From positions 13,082,001-13,146,000 of the forward strand of contig NW_026889777.1 of NCBI RefSeq assembly GCF_033153115.1: 64,000 nt of DNA. Reading direction: 5' to 3'. Both the position numbers and the translations under genes were made by a program. Shown piece after piece: positions 1,230 through 59,817 of the stretch. The stretch comes from Saccostrea echinata. Lineage: Eukaryota. Under the pieces are notes generated by a model. It was not told the origin of the DNA. It made no database searches and worked only from the letters and a program-made list of their open reading frames with translations. Position 1 is the first letter of the stretch. Each line of letters starts with the position of its first letter.

Positions 1230-1557
1230 ATTTAGAGAACGAGACAGGTACTGTATTAATCGTAGATACAAATTTGGGGTGGACGAGTGCGTAGCACGAG
1301 TCTCCACCCCCAAATTTGTATCTACGATACAGAACCTGTCGAGTTCTCTAAATGATTTGTGACACGATCAATCAAAAAAAAGCACCGCCCACTGTATACC
1401 TGTACAGCATCCAAACTTCTGCCAGTGTTCTATCCTTTCTGACATATTTCATTTTGTCAAATAAAATCTGCAACATGACTATTTTGTTCTCTCTGTAGAT
1501 GAGACCTCGACGTGTAGTATACATCCGCAGTATTAGCTGCAATAATGTAGCCCTCTC

Positions 1558-1593
<36 letters not shown>

Positions 1594-3206
1594 GGAGAGG
1601 GCTACAACTCCTTAGGATCTCCGTAATGGTGCAAGTGCGGGAGTGATTCACTACCGCACAGATTTCAGCTCAAATTATCAGTAAGTGGGTATTTTATTAA
1701 CATATCTTACCTGAACTCATAAAATGTAGTTATGCAGGACATGAATTGATCCAAAAATATACAGAACAATCCGTATATCGGTTATTTTTCGTGTATGTCA
1801 ACATCACAACTTGAATTTATCCGCCATGTTTACTGACCTTGATCGATTTTATTTTGGGACAACCAATGAGAATTTGGGATCTAGGGGAGCGGATCTGTAT
1901 GGAATTCCCTTATTATAAGCATAAATATCACTGTTTATGATAAAAAAAATCACGTGGAATGCTTTTATTTATCGATGTTTAGTTATATCATACTACACAA
2001 ACATTTATCAACACCGACATTTACATTATCAAGCAATTCTAAATTTCAAGCGCAAGTCTCAGTACATCACGCGAGAACTGTCATGGCTGCTGAGGTGAAC
2101 GACCGGAAAACACGCAGATTTATTTTACTTGGTTTTCGCGTATAAAGGGCTATGATGTTGATAGTGAATAAAAATTCCGTCTTATTGGAAGTAAGTTGAA
2201 TGCAAAAACAATTTATTTTGCCTGCAGTCGCCCGTATCTAAAAAATATATTTGCACCATTACGGAGATGCAGTGGAATTGTAGCCCTCTCCTGAAAATAT
2301 CAGATTAAAAAAATCGGAGAGGGCTACATTATTGCAGCTACCGCAGTATATATATTTCCACGGACGACGAAAGATTTAGTCAGATTAGTTTTTACAACGG
2401 GGTAGATGTGACAGACTTGAAGTCAGTCTTAATTGATAAGGTGGACGATTTAACCTTGTTGTAGATAGAGCTTGATCCTAATTTATTTTAAGGGTCTTAA
2501 AATCTTAGTTTAACTAGATACACATATAGGCGATACAGACAGTTTTTCGATGGACTTTGATGTTACGGATTTTATTTTCTTTTTGAAATGCAACATTAAA
2601 AACGAAGTGAAAGAGATGCGCGGCAGTCGTCAGCAATAAGGATTTAAGATGAAATTTAAAAAAAAAAAAAACCCTGATAGAATGGACTTGGTTGAGTTTG
2701 CACGAGAAGAGTGGAAAATGGGGGGAGGGGGAGTGCGAATTTCACGTAATGTATGCTGCATCCGCGAACCCATTGGCTTTACTATTTTGAAGGGGGCACA
2801 AAAAGCAGGGAAAGCAAACAGGTTTTCAGGAATTTATCCAACATAGGATGTTTTCATAATTGCGAATTTTCCTTTTCGTTTGGATCGAATTGACGTGTAG
2901 ATTCTGAGTGGAATAATTTTTTAAAAGTGATTAAGAAATTCTGACATTTTACATTCCTAAGGAAATATTTCTTCAAAATTTATAATTGGGAAAAATCAGC
3001 ATTTACTATTTGTACGTGCTTTTGATAAATTGAATCAGATTTATTTTTAGACCGTGCTGTATTTTAGATACAGTACAGTAGACTAATACAAGACAGTATA
3101 CAGGGCTAATCCAGAACGGAAAGTATCTCCGCCCACTGTTTTCCCGTTCTGTATTGCTAATACAGAACAGCAAACTTCAAAGAAAAAGACCGCAATCGTG
3201 TCACAA
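1230..3206 (+). mobile_element. Non-autonomous element with a terminal hairpin and short internal inverted repeat (Crypton-like, tentative)
   Basis: Hairpin 1230-1353 centred on GCGTAGC (1289-1295). The 12-bp ttgtgacacgat (1357-1368) is inverted at 3195-3206. Same layout as the elements at 51295, 59265 and 50561. The right boundary rests only on the 12-bp IR. Confidence 0.55.
1534..2340. mobile_element. Non-autonomous TIR DNA transposon with 9-bp TSD (AcademH- or MULE-like)
   Basis: Perfect 25-bp TIR tagctgcaataatgtagccctctcc, extending imperfectly to ~100 bp. Direct repeat ccgcagtat at 1525-1533 and 2341-2349. TAG...CTA termini. Confidence 0.85.
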
Positions 3207-3669
3207 TCGAATGGTAAGTTAAAATAGACCAATTCAGAAACTTTTGGAACATATATTAAAGAGGATCCTTTGATTTGATTATTGATATTTTCATATAGAA
3301 AAAAACCCAAATGTCTGTGTGTACACTCAACAAATGTATTTATGTTTTGAAAATTCAGTAAGAGTACCTGTTTATTTTCACCCAGGCTTATTTCTTATAC
3401 GCGTTTACTTTATTTGTTTGTATGTTGTTTAACGTCCCTCTCGAGAATTTTTCACTCATACGGAGACTTTTCATAGCACATCACCGTTATTTGTTGGGAA
3501 AATCGAATTTTACATTAAATAATCAAACATAATAAGCGCAAATAATAAATATTTCTACTTAAGTGAAATCGGAATATCACCTATTTTTTCCCCTGACCCT
3601 TAAAATGAAAAAATATTTTTCAAATAGAAGGTACAGATAAAAGCAGATTGCATTATACATCACCATATT

Positions 3670-3970
3670 AGATACAGATTTATGTTATAAATCACAATAG
3701 AGACAAATTCATGTTATAAACCAAAAGAAATACAGATCTGTGTTATAAACCACAATAGATACAGATTTGTGCTATAGAGCACAATATGTACAGATTTGTA
3801 TTATTTATAACAAGAAATACAGATCTATGTTATAAACCACAATATATACAGATTTGTGTTATAAAGCATAGTATATACAGATTTGTGTTATAAACCACAA
3901 GAAATACAGAGTTGTGTTATAAACCACAGACAGATATGTGTTATAAATCACAATAGATAGAGATCTGTAA
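3670..3970. repeat. Minisatellite, ~26-28 bp unit
   Basis: About 10 degenerate copies of tacagatttgtgttataaaccacaa(tag/gaa)a. Confidence 0.85.
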
Positions 3971-5262
3971 ATATGTATCTATTGTATTAAACAGAGATGT
4001 GCTGAAATTTCTAACAGACACATTTGTAGTTTTGCTCTTTCTTGCAACATAATTTGGGGTCACACGACTGTCACAGAAAATTGTTCGCTTATAGTCCGTA
4101 TATTGTGATATAGATATTTAACACATGAGAACGCGCTATCTCTCTTGATCTCAAATAATTTGACAAATAATGGCAGGTTGTTTATATACACAAATAGCTT
4201 AAGACCCAGATTCGGATACTATAATCTATCCTTCACAGTTTCAACAGAGATTCTAATCTCATTAAGTAATGTTTTATCTTCACTAACTCTGGTCTCTTCT
4301 TCCCGTTTATTCTCTGTCTGTACATCTTTGTTAGCGTCCTCCTTAGAGACACTTTAGTTTATTTATGTAAACGTAATATGTATTTCACTTGTATCAACAG
4401 TCCATTTTCCTTTCAATTTCCATTCCTTTTGGTATTTTTCCCTTTTTGCCATTTTTTCTTTAAACTATAGGACTAACATATAGAATTCAAACAGTAAACT
4501 TGCTATCTGTTATAAAGGCTTCTATGTTCATTGTCGTTCTCTCAGAGCTTATACTGGCCTGAGTTAGCTCTAATCAAATTGCCATCTGATATCCAATGGC
4601 AAAGATTCATTTGCTGCTGGTTATATGTCTAGCATATTTTTTTTTTTGGGGGGGGGGGGACTTGATAGCTTGTAAGAAAGTTCTGAGCGGGTAATTTCTT
4701 CTGACTGGAAATGGAATCCCCCTAAAAAAAATCCCCTGTAATCACTCCTTGAGTTTTCTATCCTTACCTTTATCTCTATAAGCTAGAAGTACTTTGTCAG
4801 CTTTCTGGTCTTATTTTCCCTTTAAAGTTTTCTGTGTTTGAATCTGTCCTTTTGACAGGAAATACCCCTCAATCTATACAGTGTACTATACTCCTTCTAT
4901 CTTAATTCTTATGCTTCCATGCTTCTCTATAATGCTGTTTTTGTTTTACAGTTTCTCGTGTTTTCCGTTTTTCATTTTCTTCACTTTCATAGGTGTCTCT
5001 CGTGGTATCTCTATTGCTAATCCGAATAAAACTGGTGACGATAACAAGCAGTAATCAATCTCATAATTCTTACACATATAGTCAATGTAAATGGAGAGCA
5101 GGGCAAATAATAGTATTGATTCGATCCATATAAGGTGTTCATACTTTCTTCAAATTATATTCTATATAGTGCAGGTTTCCCTTAAGTGTGTTTTAGCATA
5201 GGGGCTTGTCTTCCGGATTGTGAAATGTAAAATAAATTTTAAAAATTTTGAATCTTCTTTAA

Positions 5263-5645
5263 GGACCCTCTATACACTAGAGAAAAATATTTTTTGGACA
5301 TTGAGAAAATTATAGTGTGTAAAGGTGTAAGTATTGAGCTTGTCTATCACCTTTTCAGCATAGGGTGCCTTGCATTTACCCCAAGGAAAAATGTTCAAAG
5401 ACAATGAAGTACTGATGAGCATAAATCACTGTTGTTTAATTAAGTGGGCAAAATACCTGCAAATGAAGTGTTCTATCTATTCATCTTGGCCTATTAAAGT
5501 GTTATGAATGCTTGATTTGATCACAAATTAAGTAATAAACTGTACATTTCAATTTATTTTATTCTTGATCAAAGGGCAGATCACTCTATCAGCATAAAAA
5601 TACCACAAAATCAGAACTCTTCAGTGTGCAGTGTATAGAGGGCTC
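5263..5645. mobile_element. TTAA-flanked MITE (Kolobok-like)
   Basis: TTAA at 5259-5262 and 5646-5649. TIR ggaccctctatacact / agtgtatagagggctc. Confidence 0.75.
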
Positions 5646-7016
5646 TTAAATACACTTAAAAGTTGTTAAAATAGATATTCTGACACTTTCAGTCAAGAAA
5701 AACCACGTTTAAAATAGACGTACCACACCTATATACATAAACTTCAGATTTTCAATCCTCAACTTTTCTTATTCATGTAGTAATATTTCACTACCACCTG
5801 CAAATGGTATTTATGTCTCCCAACTTACGCATTTGGCAATGCTCCGAGAACGATCAATTTTTAAACCAAGGCAGGATACTGACAAATAAGTTGACGTTAC
5901 AGGAATTTTAACAAACTCCTTTAAAACCAGCATTTTCAGAAAATTCTTTGCTTGTTTTAATGTCCTTGTTTGCAAATACATCCTATCACTGAGTCGTATT
6001 TTGACTGACATTCATGTATTTCATACCAAATGTTTTGTCGATGACTACGGATTACTTCTATATATAGACGTAAGACACGTCGACAGGGGATGCATTCTCC
6101 TCTTAGGCACAGGTCTTATGTCTGGAATTTCCAGGAGTCTTTGATTAATTATGCCCTCTTCACATATTTGCATTGCATTTTTTTTAAATATTTGTTTTAT
6201 TAGATTCATCACAATTCCTTATCTTCGCCTTTCTACTTTTATATGTGGACGTATTACAAACATTGCCTTCCCAATACTTTCAATATCATTTTTTTAATCT
6301 GCAGTCTGATAATGCTGATGAAGTTTATTTTGACCATGCTGCTCGGATGCCACAGCAGGTGGTCTCATCTTTTGTAGCCAAGTTAATTCGGTCAGTTATG
6401 TCATTTACTTGCTGGGGAATGGATCGAGAAGGGCGAATAGATTGAAACAGAACGAACGAGACGTTGAAAAGATTTAACTGTAAGTGTGTATGTTAATTCT
6501 TCCCTAAATGAATATTCTTACATGTAAATCAATCAGCTGTTTTAGGCAATATAGTTATGAGAGCACACTTTAAAAAATTCGATGCATGACAGCAATGTCA
6601 GTTAATTATAGAAATTTTCCCATGCATGCACGCATACAAAAGGGTTAAGCTGTTTGGTTACCGAAAGTCATATATTTATTAGACTAAGTATATAACTTAA
6701 CGAAAGAGTATATGATAACCAAATAGACTTGTGCTTAACACACACGTCTGATCCATGTAGTCTGGAGCTATGATGAAAATTTGTCCAGATTCTATTTCCT
6801 GTTCTTATTTTTGGCATAAAATGCGACAAGCTAGGATTCTCTGAATTTTAAAGAAATCCTCGTGAACATACCAGGCCCCTAGAACGGGGGGAGGGGGGGG
6901 GGAGGGAGGAGGGGGGCTCCCCCCCAATTTTTGAGTATAATATTTTGTTATTGTAAATTTTCCTTTAGATGCTGCCCCCCCCCCAATTTTTTTGGTTTGA
7001 AGGTCGAGCACTAGCA

Positions 7017-7152
7017 NNNNNNNNNNNNNNNNNNNNNNNNNNNNNNNNNNNNNNNNNNNNNNNNNNNNNNNNNNNNNNNNNNNNNNNNNNNNNNNNNNNN
7101 NNNNNNNNNNNNNNNNNNNNNNNNNNNNNNNNNNNNNNNNNNNNNNNNNNNN
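7017..7152. other. Assembly gap
   Basis: Run of N, flanked by G/C-homopolymer-rich MITE-like sequence. Confidence 0.99.
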
Positions 7153-8090
7153 CCTCCCCCCCCCCTTTTAGGTCAATTTAGGGTTTTTTTGTTTTTGTTT
7201 TTTTTTTTTGTTGTTTTTTTTTTTTTTTTTTTTTTGGTTTTGGTTTTGGTTTTTTTGCTTGTCGGATTTTCTTTTTGGAAAGTTGCCCCCCTTTTTTTAA
7301 AACCATTGCTACGCATGTTGCATACAATTGATGTGGAAGCAAAATGAAAGTCGTTAAATGAAAAAAATTATGTAATCCCTGTAGATTCTATGTCGATCTT
7401 CAATGAATAATTTAATGATTAGTATATGAATGTAATTCTAATAAGTTTAAAAGGTCATGAGATATATGACCTGATATACTTTCCACCCCAGAAAATTAAA
7501 AAATCCCTAGGTTTACTTCAATTTTTTGCGGCCGAGAAGACTTCGATCTATTCATTGTTTAATTCAGATAAAAGTTCAGTAAAAATTATACAGAAGCATA
7601 AGTTTGCCATTATTGAAATTTCAGGCACTGAATCGTGGACTGTATGCACTTACATATGTGTGTGATACATGTACATGTTTGTACGTATGTATGCACATAC
7701 ATGTAGATAACAGGTATCGGGGAGGTGTCCTCCTTTTTTCCCAAACATTACTTTTTACTATTGAAAAGTTTCATTGAAATGGCAGTTGCCCCCCCCCCCC
7801 ACTTTCAATAGTACAACTCTTTCTTTCTTAAATTGTTTGTAAGTATATTATATGACATGTATATGACAATATAAGAGCCTGTACAATGTACTTTCTTTTT
7901 GTCCGTTGAGGGTCCATAACTGGTCAATAAACTGATTGAATTATTTCATTTAAAGCCTAATTAAAAAAAAATATACATATTTTGTTTTTTATTTATTTAA
8001 TTCAGGCGTTATTTAAATCTCCGTGTAGACTTACAATCCTTCATACACAAGTCGGTATATAAAGTTACTACATCTAAGGTCAACGATAAA

Positions 8091-8207
8091 GGAAATTCCA
8101 GTTCTATAAATAACTCCTTGATCAATGAATGCGAGTCTAGACTGGCGATATCTTTCTATATATACAGGGAAGAAAAAAGGTATACTTCACAATCGTCTTT
8201 CTCCGAG
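8091..8207 (+). promoter_or_regulatory. Candidate promoter and 5' UTR exon of the UBC gene
   Basis: GGAAATTCC at 8091-8099, TATAAATA at 8105-8112, donor GAG|GTAGGT at 8207/8208. The first coding exon has an acceptor (ttttgcag, 9797-9798) upstream of its ATG, implying an upstream UTR exon. Confidence 0.4.
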
Positions 8208-8655: not shown

Positions 8656-8834
8656 TACGGAAGCCGGTTGGTGCTAGGTAGAAAAAAATATTTTATCTGG
8701 CGGCCGCCAAATAAATAACTGGCGGCCGCCAGATAAATATTTGGCGGCCGTTTTTTAATGTGGCGGCCGCTAGATAATTATCTGGCGGCCGCCAGATAAA
8801 ATATTTTTTTGCCTGGCACCTACCGGCTTTCATA
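8656..8834. mobile_element. MITE with TAYGG-type termini and 6-bp TSD (IS3EU-like), with internal GGCGGCCGC repeats
   Basis: TSD acacat at 8650-8655 and 8835-8840. TIR tacggaagccggt / accggctttcata. Five tggcggccg units inside. Confidence 0.8.

Positions 8835-14025: not shown

Positions 14026-14068
<43 letters not shown>

Positions 14069-24307: not shown

Positions 24308-24371
<64 letters not shown>
24308..24371. repeat. (TA)n microsatellite
   Basis: About 32 TA units. Confidence 0.97.
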
Positions 24372-24375
<4 letters not shown>

Positions 24376-24577
24376 ATTAAAAATAACAAGGCAACAATGT
24401 TAGTAAAACGTAAGCGCTTTCATTATACTTCTTCAGACGTTTTACAATGATGATCATCAGGTAGCGTTATAACGTCACATGTTTGAATTGTTTTGAATTG
24501 TAAAACGTCTGAAGAAGTATAATGAAAGCGCTTACGTTTTACTAACATTGTTGCCTTGTTATTTTTCATTTTCATAT
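24368..24577. mobile_element. Inverted repeat, probable Penelope-like element pLTR remnant
   Basis: About 80-bp near-perfect arms (24368-24448 / 24497-24577) next to (TA)n tracts. Each arm has a hammerhead core. Confidence 0.6.
24500..24542 (+). ncRNA. Minimal type I hammerhead ribozyme motif (mirror copy at 24403-24445 on -)
   Basis: gtaaaacgt-CTGAAGA-agtataat-GAA-AGCGCT-T-acgttttac: 9-bp stem I, CUGANGA and GAAA boxes, palindromic stem III. Confidence 0.6.
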
Positions 24578-46341: not shown

Positions 46342-48955
46342 TTATAATTTATCTGATATAAAAGAAACTGTGATATGGATAATTAACTATGCAGGTGAAA
46401 TTGACAAGTATTGTTTTCAAATCAGAAAATTTAAAGATTTAATTTTCCTATCTAATAGGAATTATTATTGTATGTTTTATAGAGTTGTTATTATGGCATG
46501 CCCTGCTATGGAAAGTGTATTACAATTTTGATTATGTGTTGACAGATCTTGCTTTATATAAATTCAGACTTTCTTTGCTGTGATCCTTGATTAAAGTTAT
46601 GCTTAGCAGGTTGGGAGTGAAGGAATTGAAATTCCATGTCAGAATTTGTTTCGTATTCCAGAATCAGTATTCGAGAGAAGTTGCAATATAACGTGTAGCT
46701 TTTAGTGATGTCATGATATAATGTTATATGATGTTATGTGTAATTGTATTTTTGATTTATGAAAATGTTATCTAAAAACTGTGATACACATTTAAGAGTG
46801 TTTTTTTTTATATATATATACATAATGTACTGTGAAGATTCCATCCAACAGGAAATTTTATATTTTAATATCCATTGTGTGTTTTGCCTTTCACCAAGAG
46901 AGAGAGAAAGAAAGAATAAAATCACTATATTTAGGTTGCAAAAATACATACAAGTATATAATATGTTCTGCTGAAAAAGAGTTGGAATGCTTTCATTTGT
47001 GTAAATGTAAAAATCATAATCGTAATTCACATAACTATTTTGTATTAATTGCACCAGAACACTGATGTTTACATCTCATTCACAGTATTTGGTGAACGTT
47101 TTTCAGTATTACTTAAACATGAAATAGTCTAGTCAATCTAGCCAAAAAAATTGAGCTCAACCTCCAACTTCTTACAACAAAAATTATTACTTTTACGATT
47201 ATTAAGTTCAAGTATATTTGAAATATTTGTAGTAAAAAGTCTAGGAAAAAATCTAATGAGGGGAAAACATAATTTTGGCTTGTTGTAAATCTATCCATAT
47301 ATTAGAAGAGAAATGCTCATTTTGCAAAATAGTGTGATATGGTTTAAAGTGTTTGATATTACGATAGATCATTTGTTCAATAGATAATATCAATATTTAA
47401 TGAATGTTTTTAATACAGTTATATACTTTTTGGGTCATCATTTTTTTTTTTGAAAAAATAACTTTAAAAACAATGGTCGGTGAATGCAGTTGTTTTAGGG
47501 AGGGGGGGGGGGCACTATGTTTCCTGCATTCTGATGATTAGCCTCAGCCAAATATTTTATCATGAAGGGGAAAATGCAACAAAGACTCGAAAATGTTGAA
47601 AATGTCGAAAATGCTGAAGTATCTGTAATAATCTTTTTTGCCGGGTATAAAAATACCATTCTGTGGAGTATAATTCACTTCCTCTATCTCCATGATGGAA
47701 TAGTGCTCTAAGACACGAACTAAAATTCACTGTATGGGCAACAGCTATGCCCCCTTTTCATATTTATGTACCCAAAATAATGCTTTCCACTCTTCAAATT
47801 TTATTAGATTTTTTTCCACATATACCCGGTATTTTATGGTTACTTTCATTATTTATTTATTTTAACATTTTCTGTTACAATTAGTTTGATATTAATTGAT
47901 AAATTGACTTAACTAAAGTAAGTGTTTCACATTCATAATCAGTTTGAAGGAATTCTCCAGTTTGAGTTGGAAGTGATGTTTAATTAAACCTTTATCTTGA
48001 TCATGATCACAAAAATTTTACAAGAAAATAATGCATTCGTTTGAAGATGTTTTATATTTATTATCTGTTTGAATGGCCTGGACTATGTTTTATGTTTTTG
48101 TTGAGAAATAAAAATTTATAAACCATATTCTAACCAAATTCTTTTTGAATCCTTTAGTAACCTGACAATCATCAGATTTGGAAAAATGCCATTGTTGCTA
48201 AAAATGTCATCCTGGATAAATAAAGGCTTTATTTTAGTATAATTGGAAACAGGCCGGTACTTTATGTTTCTGACGACGTTTTTCTTTTTTTCTTTTCTTT
48301 TTTTTTTTTTTAATTTTTAACTTTTTAAGAAATGCTTGCTTTGTAGCACCCCATACAGAAAAAAAAATTGGTTGCCCCCCTCCCCTCGAACTGAAAATGC
48401 TTCCTAATGGCCTGTATTTCATGGAAAAATAAGAGAGATATTTATAGTATCATTAAAATTATTCTTACGGGCATGTATTTCATGGAAAAATAAGAGAAAT
48501 ATTTATAGTGCCATTAAAATTAAGGCAAGGTTATAAGCTTGCACATGCGCTGAATTCTGAATTGCTAATACTTTAAGGACTGTGTATAATGTAGAGATAT
48601 ATTACCTATATTCAAAATGAAGCCCCAGACATCTCAGTATAAGTATTACGTTATGTATGCATTATATATGTAGGTAAATTAGTCCTAGAGATTGGACATA
48701 TATGAGAGGCAATGAGATTATAAATTTAAAATATTCCAGGTTCCAAATCCAATTTTATATTTACAAGACATTTTCATCGATTATTGACTAATTAATCCTA
48801 AAGGGGGTAAAGCTCCTATTTTAAAAATTTCCGTAAGTACAATTTTTACTTTTTAAAGCAAAAGACGGTTCTTTTCTGATAAAACCGGTATTAAAGCACA
48901 AATATTAACGTAAAGTCTTTAATTATTATACTGTATTAATGTAATATAGACGTTT

Positions 48956-49493
48956 TTATTACATTTTCAACAGTGAAATACTGTAATTTATATATTGAAT
49001 AAAAATGGTATTCTGTCACAATGGGAAAGGATATCAAAATGATATCCTGTCACAGTGTGAAAGAATATCAAAAACTCGGCATTTACACTCTCGATTTTAA
49101 TTCCCTTCACAAAGAGTGTTGTAAAAAATACTCGCTGACCTTATAAGATAGAGAGAGAGAGAGTAAATAAAACATCCTAACAGAGACTAAAACTGCCAGT
49201 TTCTCTAGATATGCTGTTGAAGTCCATGTTTACGTTTTCAATCTCAATATTTTATGACGTCACGGCCTGTGATACGGCGTTACAAAGGGAAAAACAAAGA
49301 AAATGTGATTAACAGAAAATTCAATCTTTTGTGATTGATTATGGAATTTATTTCACTCGTGAGACATGTTTTTTTTAAAATATATATATTTTTTTCACTC
49401 GTGCTTCGCACCTGAGAAAATATAAAAAAAAAATCATGCCCCATGCGTGAAATAAATTCCATATGTAACTACAAAACATTAAATAACATCTAT
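48956..49493 (-). mobile_element. Hairpin-terminated non-autonomous element (same family as 51295-51813)
   Basis: Reverse-complement homology to 51295-51813, with gcttcgc at ~49403. Absent at the paralogous site (~61590). Confidence 0.8.
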
Positions 49494-49623
49494 TTATTCA
49501 TCTACATAATATAGCTCAGTAATATGTATAAAAAATTGTCTCGTTTAATATTAATAATTTATTTTATTTATAGAAACATGACAATGACAATGTCGGCGTA
49601 AACACTTTCATCCATTTAAGTTT

Positions 49624-50292
49624 TCAATAATATTCCTGAAAAATAAAAAAGAAAGATGAACCATTACATGCAGAAACCATCAAATTAGTGATATTCTGGA
49701 GGAAAAATAAAAAATGCAAATTTGCCACCATATGAACAGTTATCATTCTCCTTATTACCTTGTATCCTACACCAGATAAGATTCCTCCTTTACCACCGTA
49801 GTTACCGCCCATCCATCCTTTTCCTCCAACCATCACTCCTCCATATCCATAATTATCCAAGCTACTGCCCATTAATCCTTTTCCTCCAAGGATGATTCCT
49901 CCGAGTCCTTTACCACCGTATTTACTGCCCATCAATCCTTTTCCTCCAACCATCACTCCTCCATATCCATAATTATCCCAGCTACTGCCCATTAATCCTT
50001 TTCCTCCAAGGATGATTCCTCCGAGTCCTTTACCACCGTAGTTACCGCCCATCAATTCTTTTCCTCCAACCATCACTCCTCCATATCCATAATTATCCCA
50101 GCTACTGCCCATTAATCCTTTTCCTCCAAGGATGACTCCTCCGAGTCCTTTACCATGTCCTACAAGTCCTTTGCCACCATAGATGATTCCTCCATATTCT
50201 TGGCCGACATTTAATCCACCGTAGGAGGGATTATAGTAGTCATCACACACGGCTACAGAGAACAGAGCCAGACAACACAGCAGCTTGATCAT
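49624..50292 (-). CDS. Secreted Gly/Tyr/Lys/Met-rich repeat protein (shematrin/prisilkin-like structural protein), copy 1, ~181 aa
   Basis: Coding exons 50292-49759 and 49635-49624. Signal peptide MIKLLCCLALFSVAVC, three 40-aa repeats, C-terminus GYK-EYY. Non-coding exon 1 ends at 52134. Confidence 0.85.
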   Translation of the reverse strand: MIKLLCCLALFSVAVCDDYYNPSYGGLNVGQEYGGIIYGGKGLVGHGKGLGGVILGGKGLMGSSWDNYGYGGVMVGGKELMGGNYGGKGLGGIILGGKGLMGSSWDNYGYGGVMVGGKGLMGSKYGGKGLGGIILGGKGLMGSSLDNYGYGGVMVGGKGWMGGNYGGKGGILSGVGYKVIRRMITVHMVANLHFLFFLQNITNLMVSACNGSSFFFIFQEYY

Positions 50293-50560
50293 CCTTTGAA
50301 AAAATAAGTTTTTTTTTACAGGAAGCATACAAGCCAATATTGCAGGGTATTTAGAGTTAAGTTGGAAAATTCATGTTTTAGAGATACAATCCTCAATCGT
50401 CGGGAAATCATTTTTTTTTTAGAATGAACGTGATATAAGTTTTAAATCTTTTTATGAAGTATATATGATAATTGTTTCAAATTGACAAGAGGTTGAAACA
50501 CATGTGTACATAGGACAATTTCTCAAAATTAGTATCTTCAGCTCAGAAAATTATGCACAG

Positions 50561-50984
50561 ATATTTCCATTTCTATTTGTTTTCTCTGTGATAACTCTTT
50601 GAAAGTTAGGAGAGTTGATTTCTTGATCATTCTACCGAAATGCAAATTTCGCCAAGCAAAAGGTCAGGAGCTAAGAAGGCCTAATACCGGTATGCATGTA
50701 ATTCTCGTGCGGCTGTCTTTGTGTTTGACGTCAGTGGGCGGGGACTATTGAAATTGACATGTGAGGCCTCGTGTAATTTAAATCTATTAGTCTACATTTT
50801 TAAAATCTAAATTTACAATTTTATTTCACAGCGAAATGGAAATATAAGGAATCACTGTCTAGTTAGTAGAATATGCCAGGGACATCAACGATAACTGGAA
50901 ACGTGGGATATCATTTATGCATCCCACGTTTCCATCTATCTTTGATGCCCTGGCATACTCTACTAACTAGACAGTGATTCCTTA
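50561..50984 (-). mobile_element. Hairpin-terminated non-autonomous element
   Basis: Hairpin 50845-50984 and 13-bp IR at 50561-50573 / 50833-50845. Absent from paralogous intron (~62793). Confidence 0.8.
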
Positions 50985-51294
50985 AATAATTCAGATCCCT
51001 TGGATTCTCATTGAGGTTTATTGTGAGAACAAATTGTTGATATTTTCAAATAACTGAGAAGTTACTGATACAGGTAGGAATCATTTAATAAAAATAAAAA
51101 AAAAACTTTCGGAAAAAACTTCAAAACTAAATTATAATTTTGATACTAGTAAAATAAACAATTTTTTCAATGCATTATATAGTATACAAGAACATCTTTT
51201 AAAACAAGTAAAAGAAATTCTTAAAATGCGTGAGAAATCGAGAGAAGCTTGTGATATTTATATAATTTTAATTTCATGTTTATATATATATATA

Positions 51295-51813
51295 CCGTAG
51301 AGAGGATATTCAATGTTTTGTAGTTGGATATGGAATTTATTTCACGAGTGGGACAGGATTTTTGATATTTTCACGAGTGCGAAGCACGAGTGAAAATATC
51401 AAAAATCCTGTTTCACGAGTGAAATAAATTCCATATCCAACTGCAAAACATTGAATTTTCTGTTTATTACATTTTCTTTGATTTTTTCCCTTTGCCCTTC
51501 TCTTTTCTTAACACAGTGTCATATGCTGTGGCGTCATAGTTGTAGCAGTTAAGAAGTCATAGCTTGGCAGTTGAGATTGAAAACATTGTGACATAGATTT
51601 AGCAACATATTTGGGAAGAAATTGGCAGTTTTAATCTCTGTCAAGATGGTTTAGTTTCTATCTCAATCTTGTTACAGGCAAGAAATTATACTTACTTTGA
51701 TATCCTTTCACACTGTGACAGAATATCACTTTGGTATCCTTTCACACTGTGAGAGGATATCACTTTTATTCAATGAATAAATCACAGTATTTCACTGTTG
51801 AAAATGTAATAAA
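51295..51813 (+). mobile_element. Hairpin-terminated non-autonomous element (Crypton-like, tentative)
   Basis: Hairpin 51308-51456 centred on GCGAAGC (51379-51385). 13-bp IR at 51463-51475 / 51801-51813. Absent from paralogous intron (~63103). Confidence 0.82.
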
Positions 51814-52133
51814 CTAGTATATACATTTTATATTCCATGTTAAGCATTATATTCTTTCTGTTCCCTGAATAATATTTTTTTTGTATATAAAATATTGGTT
51901 CCTCAACTAGTGCTGAAATTTTTAACTTGGGCTTCTTCAAGTCGAGTTTCTTAATATTTAAATTGTCAAAAGACTGTAAACATGACAGGGAATCAAAAAC
52001 GGACTAGAAATTTAAAAAAAAAGTCCATGGTTCATTCAATAAAGGCAAGATCTCTTCAGGCTTCAGCTCGACATGTTTTACTATGCAGCATAATAAAGAT
52101 AGAGCAAGTACCGAATTAAAATTGACTTCTTAC

Positions 52134-52606: not shown

Positions 52607-52920
52607 GAGGTTTTTGGATTGGAGGGTACCAACCCGTACAGCAACTTGACACTGTGGGACATTATGCATTGGTTATAACTTATCTGATATAAAAGTAATT
52701 GTGATATGGATAATTAACTATGCAGGTGAAATTGACAGGTATTGTTTTCAAATCAGAAAATTTAAAGATTTAATTTTCTTATATCTATTAGGAATTACTA
52801 TCATATGTTTTATAGAGTTGTTGCTTTTATGCCATGACCTGCTATGGAAAGTGTATTACAAATTTGATAATGTGTTGACAGATCTTGCTTTATATATTCA
52901 GACTTTCTTCGCTGTGATCC
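52607..52920 (+). pseudogene. Duplicated fragment of the ZSWIM2 last exon and 3' UTR
   Basis: Copy of 46279-46586. The stop context CATTAG has become CATTGG, and no acceptor was copied. Confidence 0.8.
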
Positions 52921-55900
52921 TGACAATGACAATGACTTTATTCTAATTAAACTGGTTACAGTTGTAGAGAATAATAATTAAAACAAATATAAATGACAAT
53001 GCGCATTGCGTGGTAAAATTAACCAGGAGAGCGAACTCTCTCGATAATCTTTTGTACAGATTTACATAGCTTCATCAACTGTTTCTTTTTTGTAATTTTA
53101 AACAGATTCTCAAATTTGTATACATTCGGATTCACCGAATAATAATTAGATAAGTATAATGCATGACCTTGCTTGTTTTAATATTGCGTCAGTACAACTG
53201 AATTATTTTTATAATAAAACTCATTACCAATTTCTTTACAATTACATAGATTACAGATTCTTTATTCTCTAGATATACCGTGCCAGCTCCCTGTTTCAAT
53301 AGGGAGCCTAGCGTTACCAGTTCTAAATTTACAAAAAATTCTCAGAAATTTCACTGGTAAAATGTCAAAATATTTCTCAAAAGACTCTTAAATAACCTAT
53401 AATTAAGTGCTTTTGGTGAATTGGACATTTCACTATACCATGACTGTTTAAATTGATCTATAAGAGTATGATATACTTTACTTTTTAACCACTTGACATT
53501 AATCGTATTAAACTATATGATAAACCACATTCATTTAGAATTTTTTGTACAAATTTACACCATGGTGTTTCGTTTTGATTCATATTTAATGTCAGGAGTT
53601 TTGAAGATATTTTGAATTGTTTGATGCAATCAACTTAGCCCAAAAAGTAATAATTCTTACCTAAATATTAATCAACAATAGAAATCTTCCCAGTTCACCG
53701 TATACCATTGAATTAGGAGTAGATGACTTCACATTTAAGATATGTTTACGAAATTTAAGATGTAGTGTTTCAATTAACAACGACTTATTAAAACCACATA
53801 CTTCACAACCGTATAACAAAATTGGTTTAACAACTTTATCAAAGAGGTCAAGCTTGCATTTAATTTCATAGATAAATTGTGTCTTCTACATTTGCTAACT
53901 ACTCTATACATTGCTCTTGTTGCTTTGTCATACAAATCGATCTTTTATATTCAAATGAAATGACGCACTTTAACAAAATGTAACACAAAGATATCGGTAC
54001 TCGCTAACAACTTCCAATGGTACTTCATTATCTAAAAAGTAAAACTATATTGTGGTTCACTTTACCTCTGCCAAAAATAATAATTTTAGTTTTGTTAAAA
54101 TTCACCTTTAAATTCCATTTTTCACAATATTTAGAAAAAATATCTAATTGATGCTAAAACCATGTTGGTCTTATGAGAGCGAAATAGTATCATCTGCATA
54201 TAACAAGACATACAGTTTCATATATATAAGTAATACTCTTTTCTGTTTTATCTGACAATGTTTATAAACCATTAACATCATTTACAACAAGAAATTCTTC
54301 TAAATCATTGAGATATAGTGAAAAAAGAATAGGTGACAGGTTTTCCACCTGTCTTACCCCAACAGTACAAGGGAAAAAATCAGAGCTTTGTCCATTACAA
54401 AACACTTTGGACTTAATATTTTTATACCTATCTTTAATTATTTTAAAACACTTTCCATCTATATTAATCAACAAAATCTTGTTCCAAAGGCCAATATGCC
54501 AGACAGATTCAAAAGCCTTTTCAAAGTCAATAAATGCACGATATAATTTCTTCTTCAATGATTTGTAAATTTCTATTATAGAATATAAAGAATATATATG
54601 ATCCTGAGTGGAAAAATATTTGCGGAAACCAGCTTGATTTTCCAGTATAACTTCATATAAGAGAAATGCTTTCTGTATATTTACTTATTCTTTCATTCAG
54701 AACAGAAGTAAACATTTTACTCAGACAACTAATTAAGGTAATTGGCCTATAATTCTTTGGATCAGTACCATCACCTTATTTTTATATATGGGCATTATAT
54801 TACCAACCAACCATTGTGATGGGAATATACCTGACTCAAAAATTTTGTTAGATAAACATACAAATAGTTTAAGTAGGCTTACTGTGGTATTTCTGTGGTA
54901 TTTTTAATATATTCATCAAATACTTTATCTTCACCACACGCATTATCATTTTTAAGCATGCGTATACATTTAGATACCTCTTCATATGTAAAAGGTTGAT
55001 TTATATCATGATTTAATTCTACATTTGAGAGAGTTTGAAGTTTCCTCTGTTAATACATAATCGCTTTCATTATCTGAAGTTAGATTACCACATTCCTTAA
55101 AAAATTTTAAAAAATTCTCAATGTGAGCATTACATTTTGATTTACTCTCATTAGTATTTAGAGTTTTCCAATATTCTTTAAGATTTGTTGTGCGTAAAAA
55201 ATTCAATTTCTTTGTCATTTCCGATCTGTGTTTATTTCTTGCACACTTAAAGCTGAACATGACTCGTAAATAGGCATACGCCATTTTCGATAATATAATC
55301 TTAGATATCAGCATCAGGATATACTCTTCGCATTCGTTACACCTGACTGCTCTATTGTCACGGGTATCGGCGTGGAATGGCGACCCGTGTTCGTGCTGGT
55401 TATCTTGCATTACTTTTTTTTTTTTTTTTTTTACATTTTATTGCAGTTACGTATATTTGTGTTTGTAGACTGCACTGACCTGTGCAACTGTTGTAAATCT
55501 CTTTGGTATCTTACTTTCCTGCATTAGAAGAAGTATTACAGTTATTTTTGTCGCTACCAAGTGCTATATAGCATACGCCCGTATACACCGGTGACGATTG
55601 ATTACACTGAACAGAGACCAAGTGAGCGGCTTTATATACAGGGGCCCTCAGATATAGCGCAAGTCCAATTGAATATGGCGGACAGATTCTTTTTACGAAG
55701 CGTGTTCAGCTTTAAGTTTATATTTATACTTTTTCCCAGGTTCATACAGATATACAACTTCCATATTTTTTATACATCCTTTTTGCTATTCTATAGTTTT
55801 GCCTTGCAATCTTACATTCAGTTGTAGACCATGGTTTTTTAAAACTACAGTGTTTCTTTCTTATACTTGTATTCACAACACAACAACTCTTTGAGTACCA

Positions 55901-58582
55901 AAAGTTTCTCTAGCACTTTCCACTAAGATTTCACAAGTTTGACTAACTATTTATTCAATAAATTCCTGTGATGTATTTTCTGTTTTTCAATTTTCTATTT
56001 CACATTCTAATTGTAAAATTTTGTCTGACTTTAAATCTACCGAAAGTTTATAAGATAATAAGCCTTCATTGTTCCATTTTCGTACAATTTCAAAATCTTG
56101 TTCTTTAAATGGCGAACTATTGCTTGAACAAAGAAAATTTCCAAATAATAGACACAACAAAATAAGGCTATGAATATCAGATAAAAAAGATGAAAATGGT
56201 AATACTTGCATATCTTGTTCATACTTTAAGAAATTTATATTGGCTATACAATAATCTACAACACTAGTCTGCTTACAGGTTAATTCTCCATTAATATCCC
56301 CCTTTGTTCTACCATTCAAGATATAACAATTTTTACATATATCATTGAGTTTTCTTCCATATTGATTAATTGTTTTATCTTTTGATTTTCTTTCTATTGA
56401 AAAACCATACTTTTCTAAATTAAACACATCTTGACTTTCTTCTAGTATTATGTCTCTTTCTAATGCAGTTAAATCATTTTCAGTAAAAGAAATACAATGT
56501 ATAGTCTTTCTCGATGGACGTTCTACTATTAAAATCACCTAATATACATACACAGCTATATTCAGTTAACATCATAATGACCTCTTTTTCAATTTCCTCA
56601 AAAAAAAGTTGTTGATGAAAAAACGTGAATTACATGGGGGTACGTGAACATTTCCAACTACAACATGTTTATCAATTCCCAATGAACTTTCATTAATTTT
56701 TAACCATAAGATTTGGTCACATTCATTTTCAATAATGGATACATTAGGTGCATAATTATTTTGGACATAAATAACTAATCCACCTGATTTTCGAAATGAT
56801 AACACAGATCTATGTTTACTAAAAGCTGTGTAATTTTCTAAATTAATTAAATCTGCACTATCTGTTTTTGTTTCCGAAAGACATATGATATCATATTTAT
56901 TGATGAAATTTGTAAATTCTTTATCCTGTAATTTTGAAGTAAGCCTACACACATTTAGACTGATTATTTTAAGTTTCTTTTCCTTTTCGAGAGAGATATT
57001 CTTGCTTGTTATGGTTCCTGGATGGATTGTAGACTGCTCTCCATGGTGATCCTAATAGCCGTTTCCTTCAGTAAGCCTTTCCATTGCCTGTGGTACAAGT
57101 GGAACAACGTTAGGGTTTGCTTGCCTGTTTTCTCTGGTTAGCCCCTCCATTAACTGTGGTGGTGATGATACAACATTGAATTTAGCTTGAGTTCTGTATC
57201 GTGGTGTTCTTCCATAGGTTGACATACTGCTATTACTTTCCATTTGAATTCCTGTATTATCACCCACTTTCATGATAAAGGCGGTAATTTCTTCTGCTTC
57301 TACTCGTTTCCCATCTACCACTAGTTTGGTTGGTATTTCATCAATTTCCACTCTTTTCCCGTCTATAATTAATTTATCCATCACAAGTTTGGCTTTTTTT
57401 CCCTTTTTTTTAATTTTATATTTTTATTATTTTTTTTTTTTTTTGCTTTCTTGTATTAAGGGTAAAGTTGTTTCCTTCTTTCTGCAACTTCTCTCGGGAA
57501 TTGCTCGTTTTTTTCTTATGGTTTTTCTCGTAACTTGTTCGGTGCGGCGTTTCTGACGGATTTTCGATCTTTGAAACGAACAAATTTCGCAACTATTGGC
57601 CGATGTTTAAATAATGATTTTCTACCAATTCTATGGACACGGTGAAACTCAATGTCTGACATAATTTCTAGTTCATTTTTTATGAAGGCTTTAATTACTT
57701 CTTCTGCGTTTTCTTCTGCTTCTTCTTTTATTCCGTCAAAAACCAAGTTGTCCCTCATTGAACTCATTTGTAAATCTAAATTGAGTTCTCTTAATTCACT
57801 GACTTCTGTTTTCAGTGCTTGAATCTCTTTAACTGACTTCTTGATTACATTTACCTCTTGTTGACAATCCTCGTGTAGTTTCCTATGAAGGTCAATCCGT
57901 TTTCTAGGTCGTTGACCTTGGCTTTCATTTCTTTCGCACAGTCTAATTCTACGTTAATAGTGTGCACATTTTTTTCTAGAACATCTAGCCTGTTCTCATT
58001 TATAGTAAGCTTATCTAGCTTTCGGTCGATTGTCTCTAATTTATCCACAAGGGTTTTCATAACGTCTTGCATATCACCCTGTGCTGGTTCCCGCGCACTA
58101 GCCGAATTGTTGATTTGACCTACATTTCCCATTCCCATGTTATTCGTAGTTGGGGAGACATAGCTAACAAATTGCCCGTGTGGGGGCCACATGAGCCCAT
58201 GAGGAGAATACGTAATAAATTGGGGGTTTCCCTGATAGCCCTGATAGCTTGGTGTAGACTGTTGTATTGGTATTAAGTTATTACTTACATTATTGCTATT
58301 ATGTACATTGTTTTCCATTGTGGGAGCTATAACTGGTGCTCTATTTGTTTTTCTTGGTATCGACACGGTTGAGTGACTTACATGAAATTTTTCCTCGCTT
58401 TCACCACTTATGTTACCATCTGAATTCTTCCTTTTCTTTGTTTCCTTTTTCTTCTTGGCTTTAGGCATTCTTTAGAACGTCTTCACTTATCTTTCTAATC
58501 ATATCCCGCCGGTGATTACACTTATATTTATCAAAATTCGGAGCAAAACTTGAAGTCCGACATTATTAACCCACGCATGCGC
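52921..58582 (-). mobile_element. Full-length degenerate non-LTR retrotransposon (CR1/L2-group LINE)
   Basis: ORF1 ~58468-57052: coiled coil plus RRM-like DNLVFDGIKE...HRIGR...RPIVAKF. ORF2 has APE motifs (DIICLSET, SVVDY, SDIH) and RT motifs (FIDFEKAF, GVRQ.ENLSP, YADD at ~54189-54200). AATAAA plus a (TTGTCA)n tail at 52921-52952. Absent at the paralogous site (46586). Confidence 0.92.
55251..55711. mobile_element. Kolobok-like MITE nested in LINE ORF2
   Basis: TTAA at 55247-55250 and 55712-55715. TIR agctgaacatgactcgtaaa / tttacgaagcgtgttcagct. Confidence 0.85.
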
Positions 58583-58757
58583 CTTGATTGAAATAATGCT
58601 TAGCAGGTTGGGAGTGAAGGAGTTGAAATTCAATGTTAGAATTTTGTTTTGTAATACAGAATTCGAGAGAAGTTGCGTGTAGGTTTTGGTGATTTCATGA
58701 TATAATGTTATATGATGTTATGTTTTATGGTATTCTTGATTTATGAAAATGTTCTCT

Positions 58758-58907
58758 NNNNNNNNNNNNNNNNNNNNNNNNNNNNNNNNNNNNNNNNNNN
58801 NNNNNNNNNNNNNNNNNNNNNNNNNNNNNNNNNNNNNNNNNNNNNNNNNNNNNNNNNNNNNNNNNNNNNNNNNNNNNNNNNNNNNNNNNNNNNNNNNNNN
58901 NNNNNNN
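58758..58907. other. Assembly gap
   Basis: Run of N. Confidence 0.99.
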
Positions 58908-59264
58908 AGGAAAATTTATATTTTAATATCCAATGTGTGTTTTGCCTTTCACCAAGCGAGAGAGAGAGAGAGAGAGAGAGTAAAATCACTATATTGAGGT
59001 TGCAAAAATACGTACAAGTATATGATATGTTCTGCTGGAAAAGAGTTGGAATGCTTTCATTTGATGTATATGTAAATGTAAAAATCATAATCGTAATCTA
59101 CATAACTATTTTGTATTAATTGCACCAGAATACTTATGTTTACATCTCATGTTTTATACAGTATTCCCAGTATTTTTTGAATGTTTTTCAGTATCACTTA
59201 AACATGAAATAGTCTAGTCAATCTATCAAAAAAAATTGAGCTCAACCTCCTACATCTTACAACA

Positions 59265-59817
59265 GTATACAATTATGGACTCTTTCGGTGGTGAATATGG
59301 TTTGTTATTCACCAGAAAAATATCAATATTGACCGAGGCGAAGCCGAGGTCAATATTGATATTTTTCTGGTGAATAACAAACTATATTCACCACCGAAAG
59401 AGTCCATAATTGTTTTGTTATATAGTCCGGATTTGAATAAATAAGACATTGAAGGCTGCATGATGATACCACTTCCATTTACGAACTTCTGTCGTAGAAA
59501 TTTTTTTCAAAAATGTCCAGATTACAAATTATAACTTCCGTGTTTTCCTTTTGCTGTTTGTAAGACCTCGTAATGTTTAGAAAATAACACTGCAATAGGC
59601 TTGGCTAATGTTTTTCCTGCTCAGACACACAGCTGGCTCCGGCCGTTGCAACCATTGTTTACAACGTTGTTTGAGGTGTTGATTGTGACGTCAAAATGCC
59701 GCTGCACACGCACCGACCCTCCGGTGAATACGGCTTCAAAACCAGTGAATATGTAGTGTTATGAACTGTTTGCGTTTGTATAGATTATATAGGGACTATA
59801 AATAGACTATATAATAA
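59265..59817 (+). mobile_element. Hairpin-terminated non-autonomous element (Crypton-like, tentative)
   Basis: Hairpin 59269-59413 centred on GCGAAGC (59338-59344). IR ttatatagtc / gactatataa at 59418-59427 / 59805-59814. Absent at the paralogous site (~47179). Confidence 0.82.

What the first reader, a model, noticed from the sequence alone, without database searches (positions are those of the whole stretch)
1230..59817. Sequence-unrelated mobile elements share a strand-specific ssDNA hairpin signature (GNA triloop plus tandem G.A pairs)
Seen: five elements from four families (1230-3206, 51295-51813 with its copy 48956-49493, 59265-59817, 50561-50984) plus a truncated copy at 33061 share no sequence between families but have the same plan. 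Each has a 125-150 nt hairpin at one end, then a 10-13 bp motif inverted at the far end, and no TIR or clean TSD. In three families the apex is GCGNAGC, and 1-2 bp below it the stem has GA opposite GA (cGAgt-GCGTAGC-acGAg; cacGAgt-GCGAAGC-acGAgtg; accGAg-GCGAAGC-cGAggt). A second GA/GA lies further down the stem in two families (1241/1341; ~51346/~51417). The signature is always on the strand where the hairpin is 5'. Established: d(GCGNAGC) is an unusually stable DNA mini-hairpin and tandem sheared G.A pairs are stable, whereas the complementary strand would have TC/TC mismatches. Inference: selection acts on the fold of one DNA strand, suggesting mobilisation through a folded ssDNA substrate, analogous to integron attC (tyrosine recombinase) or HUH-type hairpins. 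The families may already be catalogued, probably as non-autonomous Cryptons; the shared structural code is the point of interest.
Basis: partly seen in the sequence, partly recalled or inferred. Interest (0 to 1): 0.8.

Follow-up and report, generated by a model that had tools for sequence, protein, structure and literature searches.

The report
Capped giant hairpins on rolling-circle-type transposons
Four abundant non-coding mobile elements in this mollusc-like genome are built like Helentron-type (rolling-circle) transposons, and their oversized end hairpin carries the same strand-locked cap (GCGNAGC, usually with CGAG-over-CGAG pairs), which looks selected and gives a testable handle on how such elements read their ends.

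Summary
All four families are high-copy and non-coding. Each has a 125-150 nt terminal hairpin, an 11-12 bp motif inverted 0-3 nt from the far end, head-to-tail tandem copies and no target duplication.

Family consensuses keep the GCGNAGC apex and every CGAG/CGAG site. The fourth family also has a GCGAAGC apex on the same relative strand; the window copy lost it by deletion.

Two claims need correction:
- The families are not sequence-unrelated. Families 1 and 2 share a 19-nt apex, and families 2 and 3 align weakly over hairpin plus inverted motif.
- "Always on one strand" is about 89% genome-wide. About 11% of copies carry inverted ("flop") hairpins, which arose repeatedly and with different extents.

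The layout matches Helentron/Helitron2 non-autonomous elements (HINEs), not Cryptons. No autonomous partner with these ends was found, so HUH mobilisation and the strand actually used remain inferred. By HINE convention the GA/GNA strand is the bottom strand.

This scan flagged the same cap in many other windows of this genome. I found no paper describing it.

Verdict: new variant of a known kind, with a polarity-selected hairpin cap of unproven function.

The parts
1225..3209 (+). Family 1 element (non-coding, about 2 kb because another element is nested inside it). It contains the hairpin at 1230-1353, apex GCGTAGC at 1289-1295, CGAG/CGAG sites at 1240-1243 with 1340-1343 and at 1284-1287 with 1297-1300, motif M at 1357-1368 and its inverse at 3195-3206.
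   Evidence: The hairpin-side end is defined by 21 copies. The far end is taken from the window copy only. No ORF exceeds 75 aa.
1527..2345 (.). A different foldback/TIR-type element nested inside family 1. Each of its ends is itself a small hairpin (GTAGCCCTCTCC...GGAGAGGGCTAC).
   Evidence: Read directly. Not followed up.
33062..33191 (+). Truncated family 2 copy. It has the hairpin-side terminus and the hairpin up to just past the apex (consensus positions 1-131).
48955..49492 (-). Older full-length family 2 copy (410/474 aligned positions, about 86%, identical to the consensus). Its apex reads GCGAAGC on the minus strand (49403-49409), so it has the same relative polarity.
50561..50986 (-). 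Family 4 element; the GA/GNA-type strand is the minus strand. It contains the terminal motif at 50561-50572, its inverse at 50834-50845 and the hairpin at 50846-50983. This copy has lost the apex, which the family consensus keeps (GGGC-TTC-GCCC on the plus strand).
   Evidence: Loose ends of contigs from other runs fall at 50561 and 50988.
51298..51813 (+). Family 2 element. It contains the hairpin at 51309-51455, apex GCGAAGC at 51379-51385, CGAG/CGAG sites at 51374-51377 with 51387-51390 and at 51345-51348 with 51416-51419, motif M at 51466-51476 and its inverse at 51800-51810.
   Evidence: The two termini occur 1287 and 1279 times in the genome.
59266..59817 (+). Family 3 element. It contains the hairpin at 59269-59413, apex GCGAAGC at 59338-59344, CGAG/CGAG at 59334-59337 with 59345-59348, motif M at 59418-59428 and its inverse at 59805-59814.

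Best explanation
These are non-autonomous transposons of the Helitron2/Helentron (HINE) type with an oversized terminal hairpin module.

**Layout.** One terminus carries a short subterminal inverted repeat. Its partner sits just inside a 125-150 nt hairpin at the other terminus. On a single strand, the hairpin and the pairing of the two short repeats would bring the two ends side by side, where a Rep-helicase (HUH) transposase could cut and join them. This would give circles or tandem copies and insertions without target duplication.

**The cap.** The hairpin tip is a conserved core shared by related families. It consists of GCGNAGC, usually flanked by one or two CGAG-over-CGAG blocks.

**What is shown.** The tip is kept non-palindromic and in one polarity relative to the element body.

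**What is inferred.** The polarity matters because the two strands fold differently. One strand closes into a very stable capped hairpin: a GNA mini-hairpin plus sheared G.A pairs. The other is left with an open, mismatched tip. The transposition machinery, or second-strand priming on a single-stranded intermediate, would read one of these two forms.

**What is undecided.** Which strand is read. By the HINE convention the capped strand is the complement of the strand usually taken to move.
For: **Architecture.**
- The layout matches the published HINE definition in all four families.
- Precise head-to-tail tandem copies occur in L008, L056 and L060.
- A nested insertion shows no target duplication.
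- The base next to the hairpin-side end is almost always A on the capped strand, which is T on the other strand.

**Possible transposase source.** The genome holds at least 285 Helitron-type Rep hits, many with intact 2500-2900 aa frames.

**Cap conservation.**
- The cap is kept in the consensus of every family.
- The combined motif occurs 1039 times against 0 for the control.

**Polarity.**
- It is the same in 4 of 4 families and in 78 of 88 scored copies of families 2 and 3.
- Flop copies are scattered on the family 3 tree and have different inversion extents in family 2.
- Single-arm corrections to Watson-Crick occur in L026, L028, L054 and L080.
- So mutation pushes towards symmetry or inversion, yet the families keep the asymmetric form.

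**Stem pairing.**
- Stems stay 97% paired, with 5 compensated pairs in family 2 against 1.4 in shuffles.
- Subfamilies differ by double compensatory changes.

**Chemistry from papers.**
- GCGAAGC melts at 76.5 C and marks single-strand priming sites of phage G4 and plasmid ssiA (PMC13037366).
- CGAG opposite CGAG forms a C:G / sheared G:A / A:G / G:C block (PMC10085684).
- Fungal Helitron2 elements have terminal hairpins with C-GAA-G loops, and an inverted copy of that hairpin lies near the 3' end (PMC5148889).
Against: **No autonomous partner with these ends was found.**
- Ten Helentron 3' flanks, two longer loci and one mapped 3' end show no giant hairpin.
- None shows a GCGNAGC apex set in a palindrome. 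One lone GCGAAGC heptamer without such a context lies 1.6 kb beyond the ORF in L063.

**Strand tests gave nothing.**
- The folding model sees almost no energy difference between strands.
- Private substitutions show no strand bias (C>T 112 against G>A 93, p = 0.16).
- G.T against A.C mismatches in copies are not significantly skewed.
- The two ends of family 2 are equally frequent, so there is no one-ended signature that would give the direction.

**The cap is not uniform.** Family 4 has the GNA cap but no CGAG block.

**Polarity hints conflict.** In the one autonomous Helentron whose 3' end was mapped, the small terminal hairpin has a C-GACA-G loop on the ORF-sense strand. That is the opposite polarity to what the HINE convention implies for these four families.

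**Sampling bias.** The copies examined are those most similar to the window copies.
Confidence: 0.55

Rival explanations
1. The element class is the same, but the cap is read as sequence and not as the capped fold. There are two versions. In one, oriented double-strand binding sites are used: CGAG or CACGAGTG direct repeats all point one way inside a palindrome, like the Rep-binding repeats of parvoviral ends. In the other, the complementary strand is used, where TC/TC mismatches and a weak TTC loop leave an open 13-17 nt loop that displays a conserved sequence to the transposase.
For: - Families 1 and 2 share a 19-nt apex, and CGAG occurs 2-4 times per hairpin, always in one orientation.
- By HINE convention the conventional top strand is the TC strand.
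- The 3' copy of the fungal Helitron2 hairpin also reads TTC on the top strand.
- The folding model shows no energetic benefit for either strand.
Against: - The mismatch type is exactly the one known to be stable (the CGAG block) at 5 of 5 tandem-mismatch sites, and it always lies on the same strand as the GNA loop.
- Family 4 keeps the GNA cap without any CGAG site.
- Neither version can be separated from the main reading with sequence alone.
Confidence: 0.2
2. The cap has no function in transposition. It is an inherited centre of an old hairpin module. It survives because a non-palindromic centre protects long palindromes from deletion, and its polarity is a founder effect.
For: - Families 2 and 3 are weakly homologous over the module.
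- Palindrome centres do get deleted: the window copy and several other copies of family 4 have lost theirs.
Against: - Inversions arise repeatedly (about 11% of copies). A neutral polarity should therefore have drifted towards 1:1 over the divergence separating four families, yet all four keep the same polarity.
- Any spacer would protect a palindrome, but the same heptamer and the same mismatch block are kept.
- CpG-containing CGAG sites decay in dead copies but are intact in every consensus.
Confidence: 0.1
3. The elements are moved by a tyrosine recombinase (Crypton-like) or another enzyme through a double-stranded circle, with the hairpin as a recombination site.
For: - There is no target duplication, and tandem head-to-tail copies would also follow from circle integration.
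- The flank next to the hairpin end resembles the other end of the element.
- No Rep-encoding partner was found.
Against: - The layout matches the HINE definition feature by feature.
- Subterminal inverted repeats are not a Crypton feature.
- Helitron-type Rep genes are abundant and intact here.
Confidence: 0.07
4. The strand-specific features act at the RNA level: a transcribed long hairpin that serves, for example, as a small-RNA precursor. G.U pairs and tandem G.A pairs are also tolerated in RNA.
For: The family 2 consensus keeps one G.T pair on the capped strand.
Against: - No Rfam family matches anywhere in the window.
- No expression data were obtained.
- The position of the hairpin at the element end next to the inverted motif fits an end-recognition role.
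- The GCGNAGC heptamer is documented in the review read here as a DNA mini-hairpin.
Confidence: 0.03

Closest known systems
HINEs / DINE-1: non-autonomous Helentrons (Thomas et al. 2014, PMC4067079; oyster Cg_HINE, PMC7492417)
   Same: - A short inverted repeat lies 0-4 nt from one end.
- Its partner is followed by a palindrome at the other end.
- There is no target duplication.
- Insertion sites are A/T-rich and T-flanked.
- Tandem copies occur.
- Copy number is far above that of any coding partner.
   Different: - The palindrome is 125-150 nt instead of a 5-10 bp stem.
- A conserved, polarity-locked GCGNAGC/CGAG cap is not described for HINEs in the papers read.
- No coding partner with the same ends was found.
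Helitron2 elements of Fusarium (FoHeli1/2, PMC5148889)
   Same: - Terminal inverted repeats are asymmetric.
- The terminal hairpins have a C-GAA-G triloop, and the inverted copy near the 3' end reads TTC on the top strand.
- Joined ends (circles) were detected by PCR.
   Different: - The hairpins have 5-bp stems and lie at both ends.
- They have no CGAG blocks.
- They are coding elements of 5-6 kb.
d(GCGNAGC) mini-hairpins at single-strand replication signals (phage G4 origin, RSF1010 ssiA; PMC13037366)
   Same: The heptamer is identical, and the setting is DNA that is handled as a single strand by rolling-circle-type replicons.
   Different: Those are bacterial and phage priming sites. That 2026 review does not mention transposons. 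No fold or priming was measured here.
IS200/IS605 ends and integron attC sites
   Same: These are strand-specific imperfect hairpins whose non-Watson-Crick features tell the enzyme which strand to use.
   Different: They are bacterial, with short hairpins and different enzymes (a Y1 HUH transposase and a tyrosine recombinase). The comparison is an analogy only, with no sequence or protein link.
Parvovirus terminal hairpins (flip/flop)
   Same: A terminal hairpin of more than 100 nt with an asymmetric centre that exists in two orientations, processed by a HUH nickase.
   Different: - Here the hairpin is at one end only.
- The flip:flop ratio is about 89:11, not about 1:1.
- Inversions have variable extents.
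- There are thousands of non-coding genomic copies.

Membership tests
HINE / Helentron-type non-autonomous element | Short (11-15 bp) subterminal inverted repeats: one 2-4 nt from one terminus, the other tens of nt from the other terminus. | tested here: met
   11-12 bp pairs are present in all four families. The far copy lies 0-3 nt from the end. The near copy lies about 150-170 nt from the other end.
HINE / Helentron-type non-autonomous element | A palindrome or stem-loop between the 3' inverted repeat and the 3' terminus. | tested here: met
   The hairpin sits between motif M and the terminus, ending 3-11 nt from it. It is about ten times longer than described for HINEs.
HINE / Helentron-type non-autonomous element | Insertion without target-site duplication. 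| tested here: met
   In the nested family-4-in-family-4 copy L095, the flanks map to consensus positions 157 and 158 with no duplication or loss.
HINE / Helentron-type non-autonomous element | Insertion between T and T. | tested here: inconclusive
   The flank at the hairpin end is T on the conventional top strand in most copies of all families. The single reconstructed site is T|G. The other boundary cannot be placed to the nucleotide because the ends are A/T runs.
HINE / Helentron-type non-autonomous element | An autonomous partner with the same termini that encodes Rep-helicase (with or without an endonuclease). | tested here: inconclusive
   Rep genes are abundant. However, 10 sampled 3' flanks, two longer loci and one mapped 3' end show no giant hairpin and no GCGNAGC apex set in a palindrome. 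Only a small part of the genome could be fetched.
Crypton (tyrosine-recombinase DNA transposon), non-autonomous | A partner that encodes a tyrosine recombinase. | not tested
   No search for such a partner was run.
Crypton (tyrosine-recombinase DNA transposon), non-autonomous | Ends without inverted repeats (my own knowledge of the family). | tested here: not met
   Conserved subterminal inverted repeats are present in all four families.
Parvovirus-like rolling-hairpin replicon | Hairpins at both ends, with flip and flop forms in about equal amounts. | tested here: not met
   There is one hairpin per element. The counts are 34:6 and 44:4 flip:flop. Flops are partial or whole inversions.
d(GCGNAGC) mini-hairpin plus CGAG block (structural motifs) | Sequence criteria: GCGNAGC, and CGAG facing CGAG in a stem. 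| tested here: met
   The motif definitions come from PMC13037366 and PMC10085684.
d(GCGNAGC) mini-hairpin plus CGAG block (structural motifs) | The fold actually forms and is more stable than the fold of the complementary strand. | not testable with these tools
   The nearest-neighbour DNA model treats both strands nearly alike, with a difference of 0.4-0.5 kcal/mol on 31-34 nt tips.

The most novel reading that the evidence does not exclude
The GNA mini-hairpin, with CGAG blocks where present, is a general strand-marking signal of Helitron2/Helentron-type transposons from fungi to molluscs. It would be a eukaryotic counterpart of bacterial single-strand initiation or termination signals. It would tell the Rep-helicase, or the host priming machinery, which strand of the terminal palindrome to use. 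The giant stems would be a lineage-specific amplification of that signal.
Probability: 0.25. Interest if true: 0.75.

Novelty: new variant of a known kind. Interest (0 to 1): 0.58.

Why it matters
As far as I know, how Helentron/Helitron2 elements recognise their ends, and which strand they move, has not been worked out experimentally.

This genome offers thousands of natural copies in which one small, chemically well-understood motif is kept in one polarity. Alongside them are natural "mutants": flop copies, arm-corrected copies and apex-deleted copies.

That turns a vague question into simple experiments. One is to compare the top-strand and bottom-strand oligonucleotides. Another is to compare flip, flop and corrected donors in a transposition assay.

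It would also be, as far as I could find, the first place where the d(GCGNAGC) mini-hairpin is tied to a eukaryotic mobile element.

Tried and rejected
**1. Search for the autonomous partner.** None showed a giant hairpin or a GCGNAGC apex set in a palindrome; the only heptamer hit is a lone GCGAAGC 1.6 kb beyond the ORF in L063.
- I fetched 3' flanks of 10 Helentron ORF families.
- I examined an 18-kb locus with a 2899-aa ORF and a 9-kb locus with a 1418-aa Rep-helicase ORF.
- I mapped one true 3' end by comparing two copies.

**2. Direction of transposition from one-ended copies.** The two family 2 termini are equally frequent, 1287 against 1279. This gave no signal.

**3. Single-strand deamination signature in private substitutions.** None was found. 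The test of G.T against A.C mismatch bias in stems was not significant once the consensus G.T pair is set aside.

**4. Energy difference between strands.** The folding model lacks the relevant terms, so this test is uninformative.

**5. Reads.** Only contigs of three other coded organisms held parts of the stretch, and only the repeats. They confirm the element boundaries but show no empty sites or circle junctions that can be told from tandem copies.

**6. Rfam.** There were no matches.

**7. Supplementary table of oyster HINE palindromes.** It is illegible in the held copy.

**8. Parvovirus-like flip/flop replication.** Rejected on the flip:flop ratio and on the partial inversions.
Full report
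**What is there.**

The window is G000:C28:13082001-13146000 of a 923-Mb assembly.

An unbiased inverted-repeat scan of the window finds them among its longest pairs.

In each element the hairpin lies 3-11 nt from one terminus. It is followed after about 3-10 nt, or directly in family 4, by an 11-12 bp motif. The reverse complement of that motif lies 0-3 nt from the other terminus.

The two assembly gaps (7017-7152 and 58758-58907) lie outside every element, so no conclusion depends on them.

**They are mobile, high-copy and non-coding.**

- Whole-genome searches give at least 220, 3233, 1113 and 1525 first-look candidates for families 1-4. The scored copies are 86-97% identical to the window copies and end at the same nucleotides.
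- Exact 22-mers from the two ends of family 2 occur 1287 and 1279 times.
- Precise head-to-tail tandem copies exist in L008, L056 and L060.
- A family 4 copy inserted into another family 4 copy has flanks that map to adjacent consensus positions, so there is no target duplication.
- The 2-kb family 1 copy has no ORF above 75 aa and contains a nested foreign element.
- Contigs from runs of three other coded organisms hold the repeats but not the unique flanks. Their loose ends fall at the element boundaries.

**The cap is a family-level feature.**

- The family 3 consensus (30 copies) is a perfect palindrome except for CCGAG-GCGAAGC-CGAGG.
- The family 2 consensus (32 copies) keeps two CACGAGTG/CACGAGTG sites, the GCGAAGC apex and one G.T pair.
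- The family 1 consensus (21 copies) keeps both CGAG/CGAG sites, GCGTAGC, a bulged T and an A.A mismatch.
- The family 4 consensus (21 copies) has a longer hairpin than the window copy. Its apex is GGGC-TTC-GCCC on the plus strand, which is GCGAAGC on the strand where the hairpin is 5'. The window copy and several others have lost the centre by deletion.

So four of four families carry GCGNAGC in the same relative polarity. Three of the four carry CGAG blocks on that same strand.

The motif CGAGNGCGNAGCNCGAG occurs 1039 times in the genome, against 0 for the reversed control.

All five tandem mismatch sites are CGAG facing CGAG. This is the block shown by NMR to form C:G, two sheared G:A pairs and G:C (PMC10085684). 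GCGAAGC is the mini-hairpin with a Tm of 76.5 C (PMC13037366).

The families are not unrelated.
- Families 1 and 2 share ACGAGTGCG(T/A)AGCACGAGT.
- Families 2 and 3 align in the same orientation over hairpin plus inverted motif. The score is 29, against a shuffle mean of 16.4 and a maximum of 25 (z = 4.6). They share the apex, a GAATATGG/CCATATTC block and TTTATTAYAT.

The polarity is not absolute.
- Family 3 has 34 flip and 6 flop exact matches genome-wide.
- Family 2 has 44 flip and 4 flop on contigs C1 and C2. I obtained this by cross-referencing the strand of the apex with the strand of the terminus.

Flop copies are not a clade.
- They are scattered on the family 3 body tree.
- Four family 2 flops have different inversion extents: apex only, whole hairpin including the lower sites, or mosaic.
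- Single copies in which one arm was corrected to Watson-Crick also occur.

These look like recurrent intra-palindrome recombination or template-switch events.

Because such events recur, a neutral polarity should have drifted towards 1:1. That it has not, in four families, is the best evidence for selection on polarity in the transposing lineages.

Stems remain 97% paired, with compensated changes between subfamilies.

**What kind of element.**

The layout matches the published definition of Helentron-associated non-autonomous elements:
- a subterminal repeat 2-4 nt from the 5' end;
- its partner followed by a palindrome near the 3' end;
- T-rich, T-flanked insertion;
- no duplication;
- tandem copies.

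Fungal Helitron2 elements even have C-GAA-G triloop hairpins at the 5' end, with an inverted copy near the 3' end.

The genome has at least 285 Helitron-type Rep hits, many with intact 2500-2900 aa frames.

I could not find a coding element with these ends. I examined ten 3' flanks, two larger loci and one 3' end mapped by comparing two copies, which reads ...AAACCAG-tagagctac-AGTCTC-GACA-GAGACT-t-CTGGTT. None shows a giant hairpin or a GCGNAGC apex set in a palindrome. The only heptamer hit is a lone GCGAAGC 1.6 kb beyond the ORF in L063.

Membership in the HINE class therefore rests on architecture. It does not rest on a demonstrated partner.

**Which strand.**

By the HINE convention, the hairpin end is the 3' end. 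The capped GA/GNA strand is then the complement of the conventional top strand.

On the top strand the tip would be an open, mismatched loop of 13-17 nt.

Tests that could have settled the polarity gave nothing:
- the two termini are equally frequent;
- private substitutions show no strand bias;
- there is no significant G.T against A.C skew;
- the folding model cannot see the special motifs.

The mapped autonomous 3' hairpin has a C-GACA-G loop on the sense strand, which points the other way.

So the claim that one strand's fold is selected is plausible but unproven. A reading in which the other strand, or the duplex, is recognised remains open.

**Literature and the scan.**

- Full-text searches found no paper that links Helitron-type elements with mini-hairpins or sheared G.A pairs.
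- The 2026 mini-hairpin review does not mention transposons.
- Within this scan, many first-reader notes on other windows of this genome report the same cap, one reports flip/flop polarity, and two follow-ups classed giant-hairpin elements as Helentron-like.
- I treated these notes as leads. The flip/flop and Helentron-like readings were re-derived here. The wider generality was not tested.

Noticed in passing
window 49624-50337 (minus strand): An ORF of 237 aa with a signal-peptide-like start (MIKLLCCLALFSVAVC) and about 40-aa glycine-rich repeats (GGKGLGG.../YGYGG). It looks like a secreted structural protein and lies between a family 2 copy and a family 4 copy.
   Followed up: no
window 1527-2345: A different element nested inside family 1. 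Each of its inverted ends is itself a small hairpin (GTAGCCCTCTCC-loop-GGAGAGGGCTAC, one with a poly-T loop), followed by a shared 30-nt arm.
   Followed up: no
window 8682-8810: A cluster of nested palindromes built on GGCGGCCGCC (NotI-like) cores with AT-rich spacers.
   Followed up: no
window 24368-24577 and 33878-34237: Two other inverted-repeat elements without the GCGNAGC cap. The first has 81-nt arms with a 48-nt spacer, flanked by (TA)n. The second is a TIR element whose ends carry G/C homopolymer runs. So not every long palindrome here has the cap.
   Followed up: partly
L061+L062 (G000:C9:52655500-52673500), upstream of the 2899-aa Helentron ORF: A tandem array of units of roughly 130 bp, each holding an AGGTCAnnnTGACCT palindrome, lies upstream of the Rep-helicase ORF. 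Earlier scan notes describe the same satellite.
   Followed up: no
L119:1100-1151 (G000:C13, 3' end of a 2555-aa Helentron): The true 3' end, mapped by comparing two copies, is a small two-tier hairpin that ends ...CTGGTT, with a C-GACA-G loop on the ORF-sense strand. The element extends more than 3.7 kb beyond the ORF stop.
   Followed up: partly
G000:C15:15744738-15745569 and G000:C29:18433216-18433846: A family 4 copy is inserted into another family 4 copy at consensus position 157. A second locus shows a similar partial-copy-plus-full-copy arrangement, which may mark a self-insertion hot spot.
   Followed up: partly
G000:C1:52990915-52993678 and G000:C1:53075860-53078644: At two places the family 2 termini lie 2763 bp apart instead of about 495 bp. 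This suggests a longer variant or a cargo-carrying copy, possibly within a duplicated segment.
   Followed up: no
window 48800-52000 against runs X1, X2, X3 and X9: Contigs from runs of three other coded organisms hold families 2 and 4 at 90-99% identity but do not hold the unique DNA between them. The families are therefore shared beyond this assembly.
   Followed up: partly
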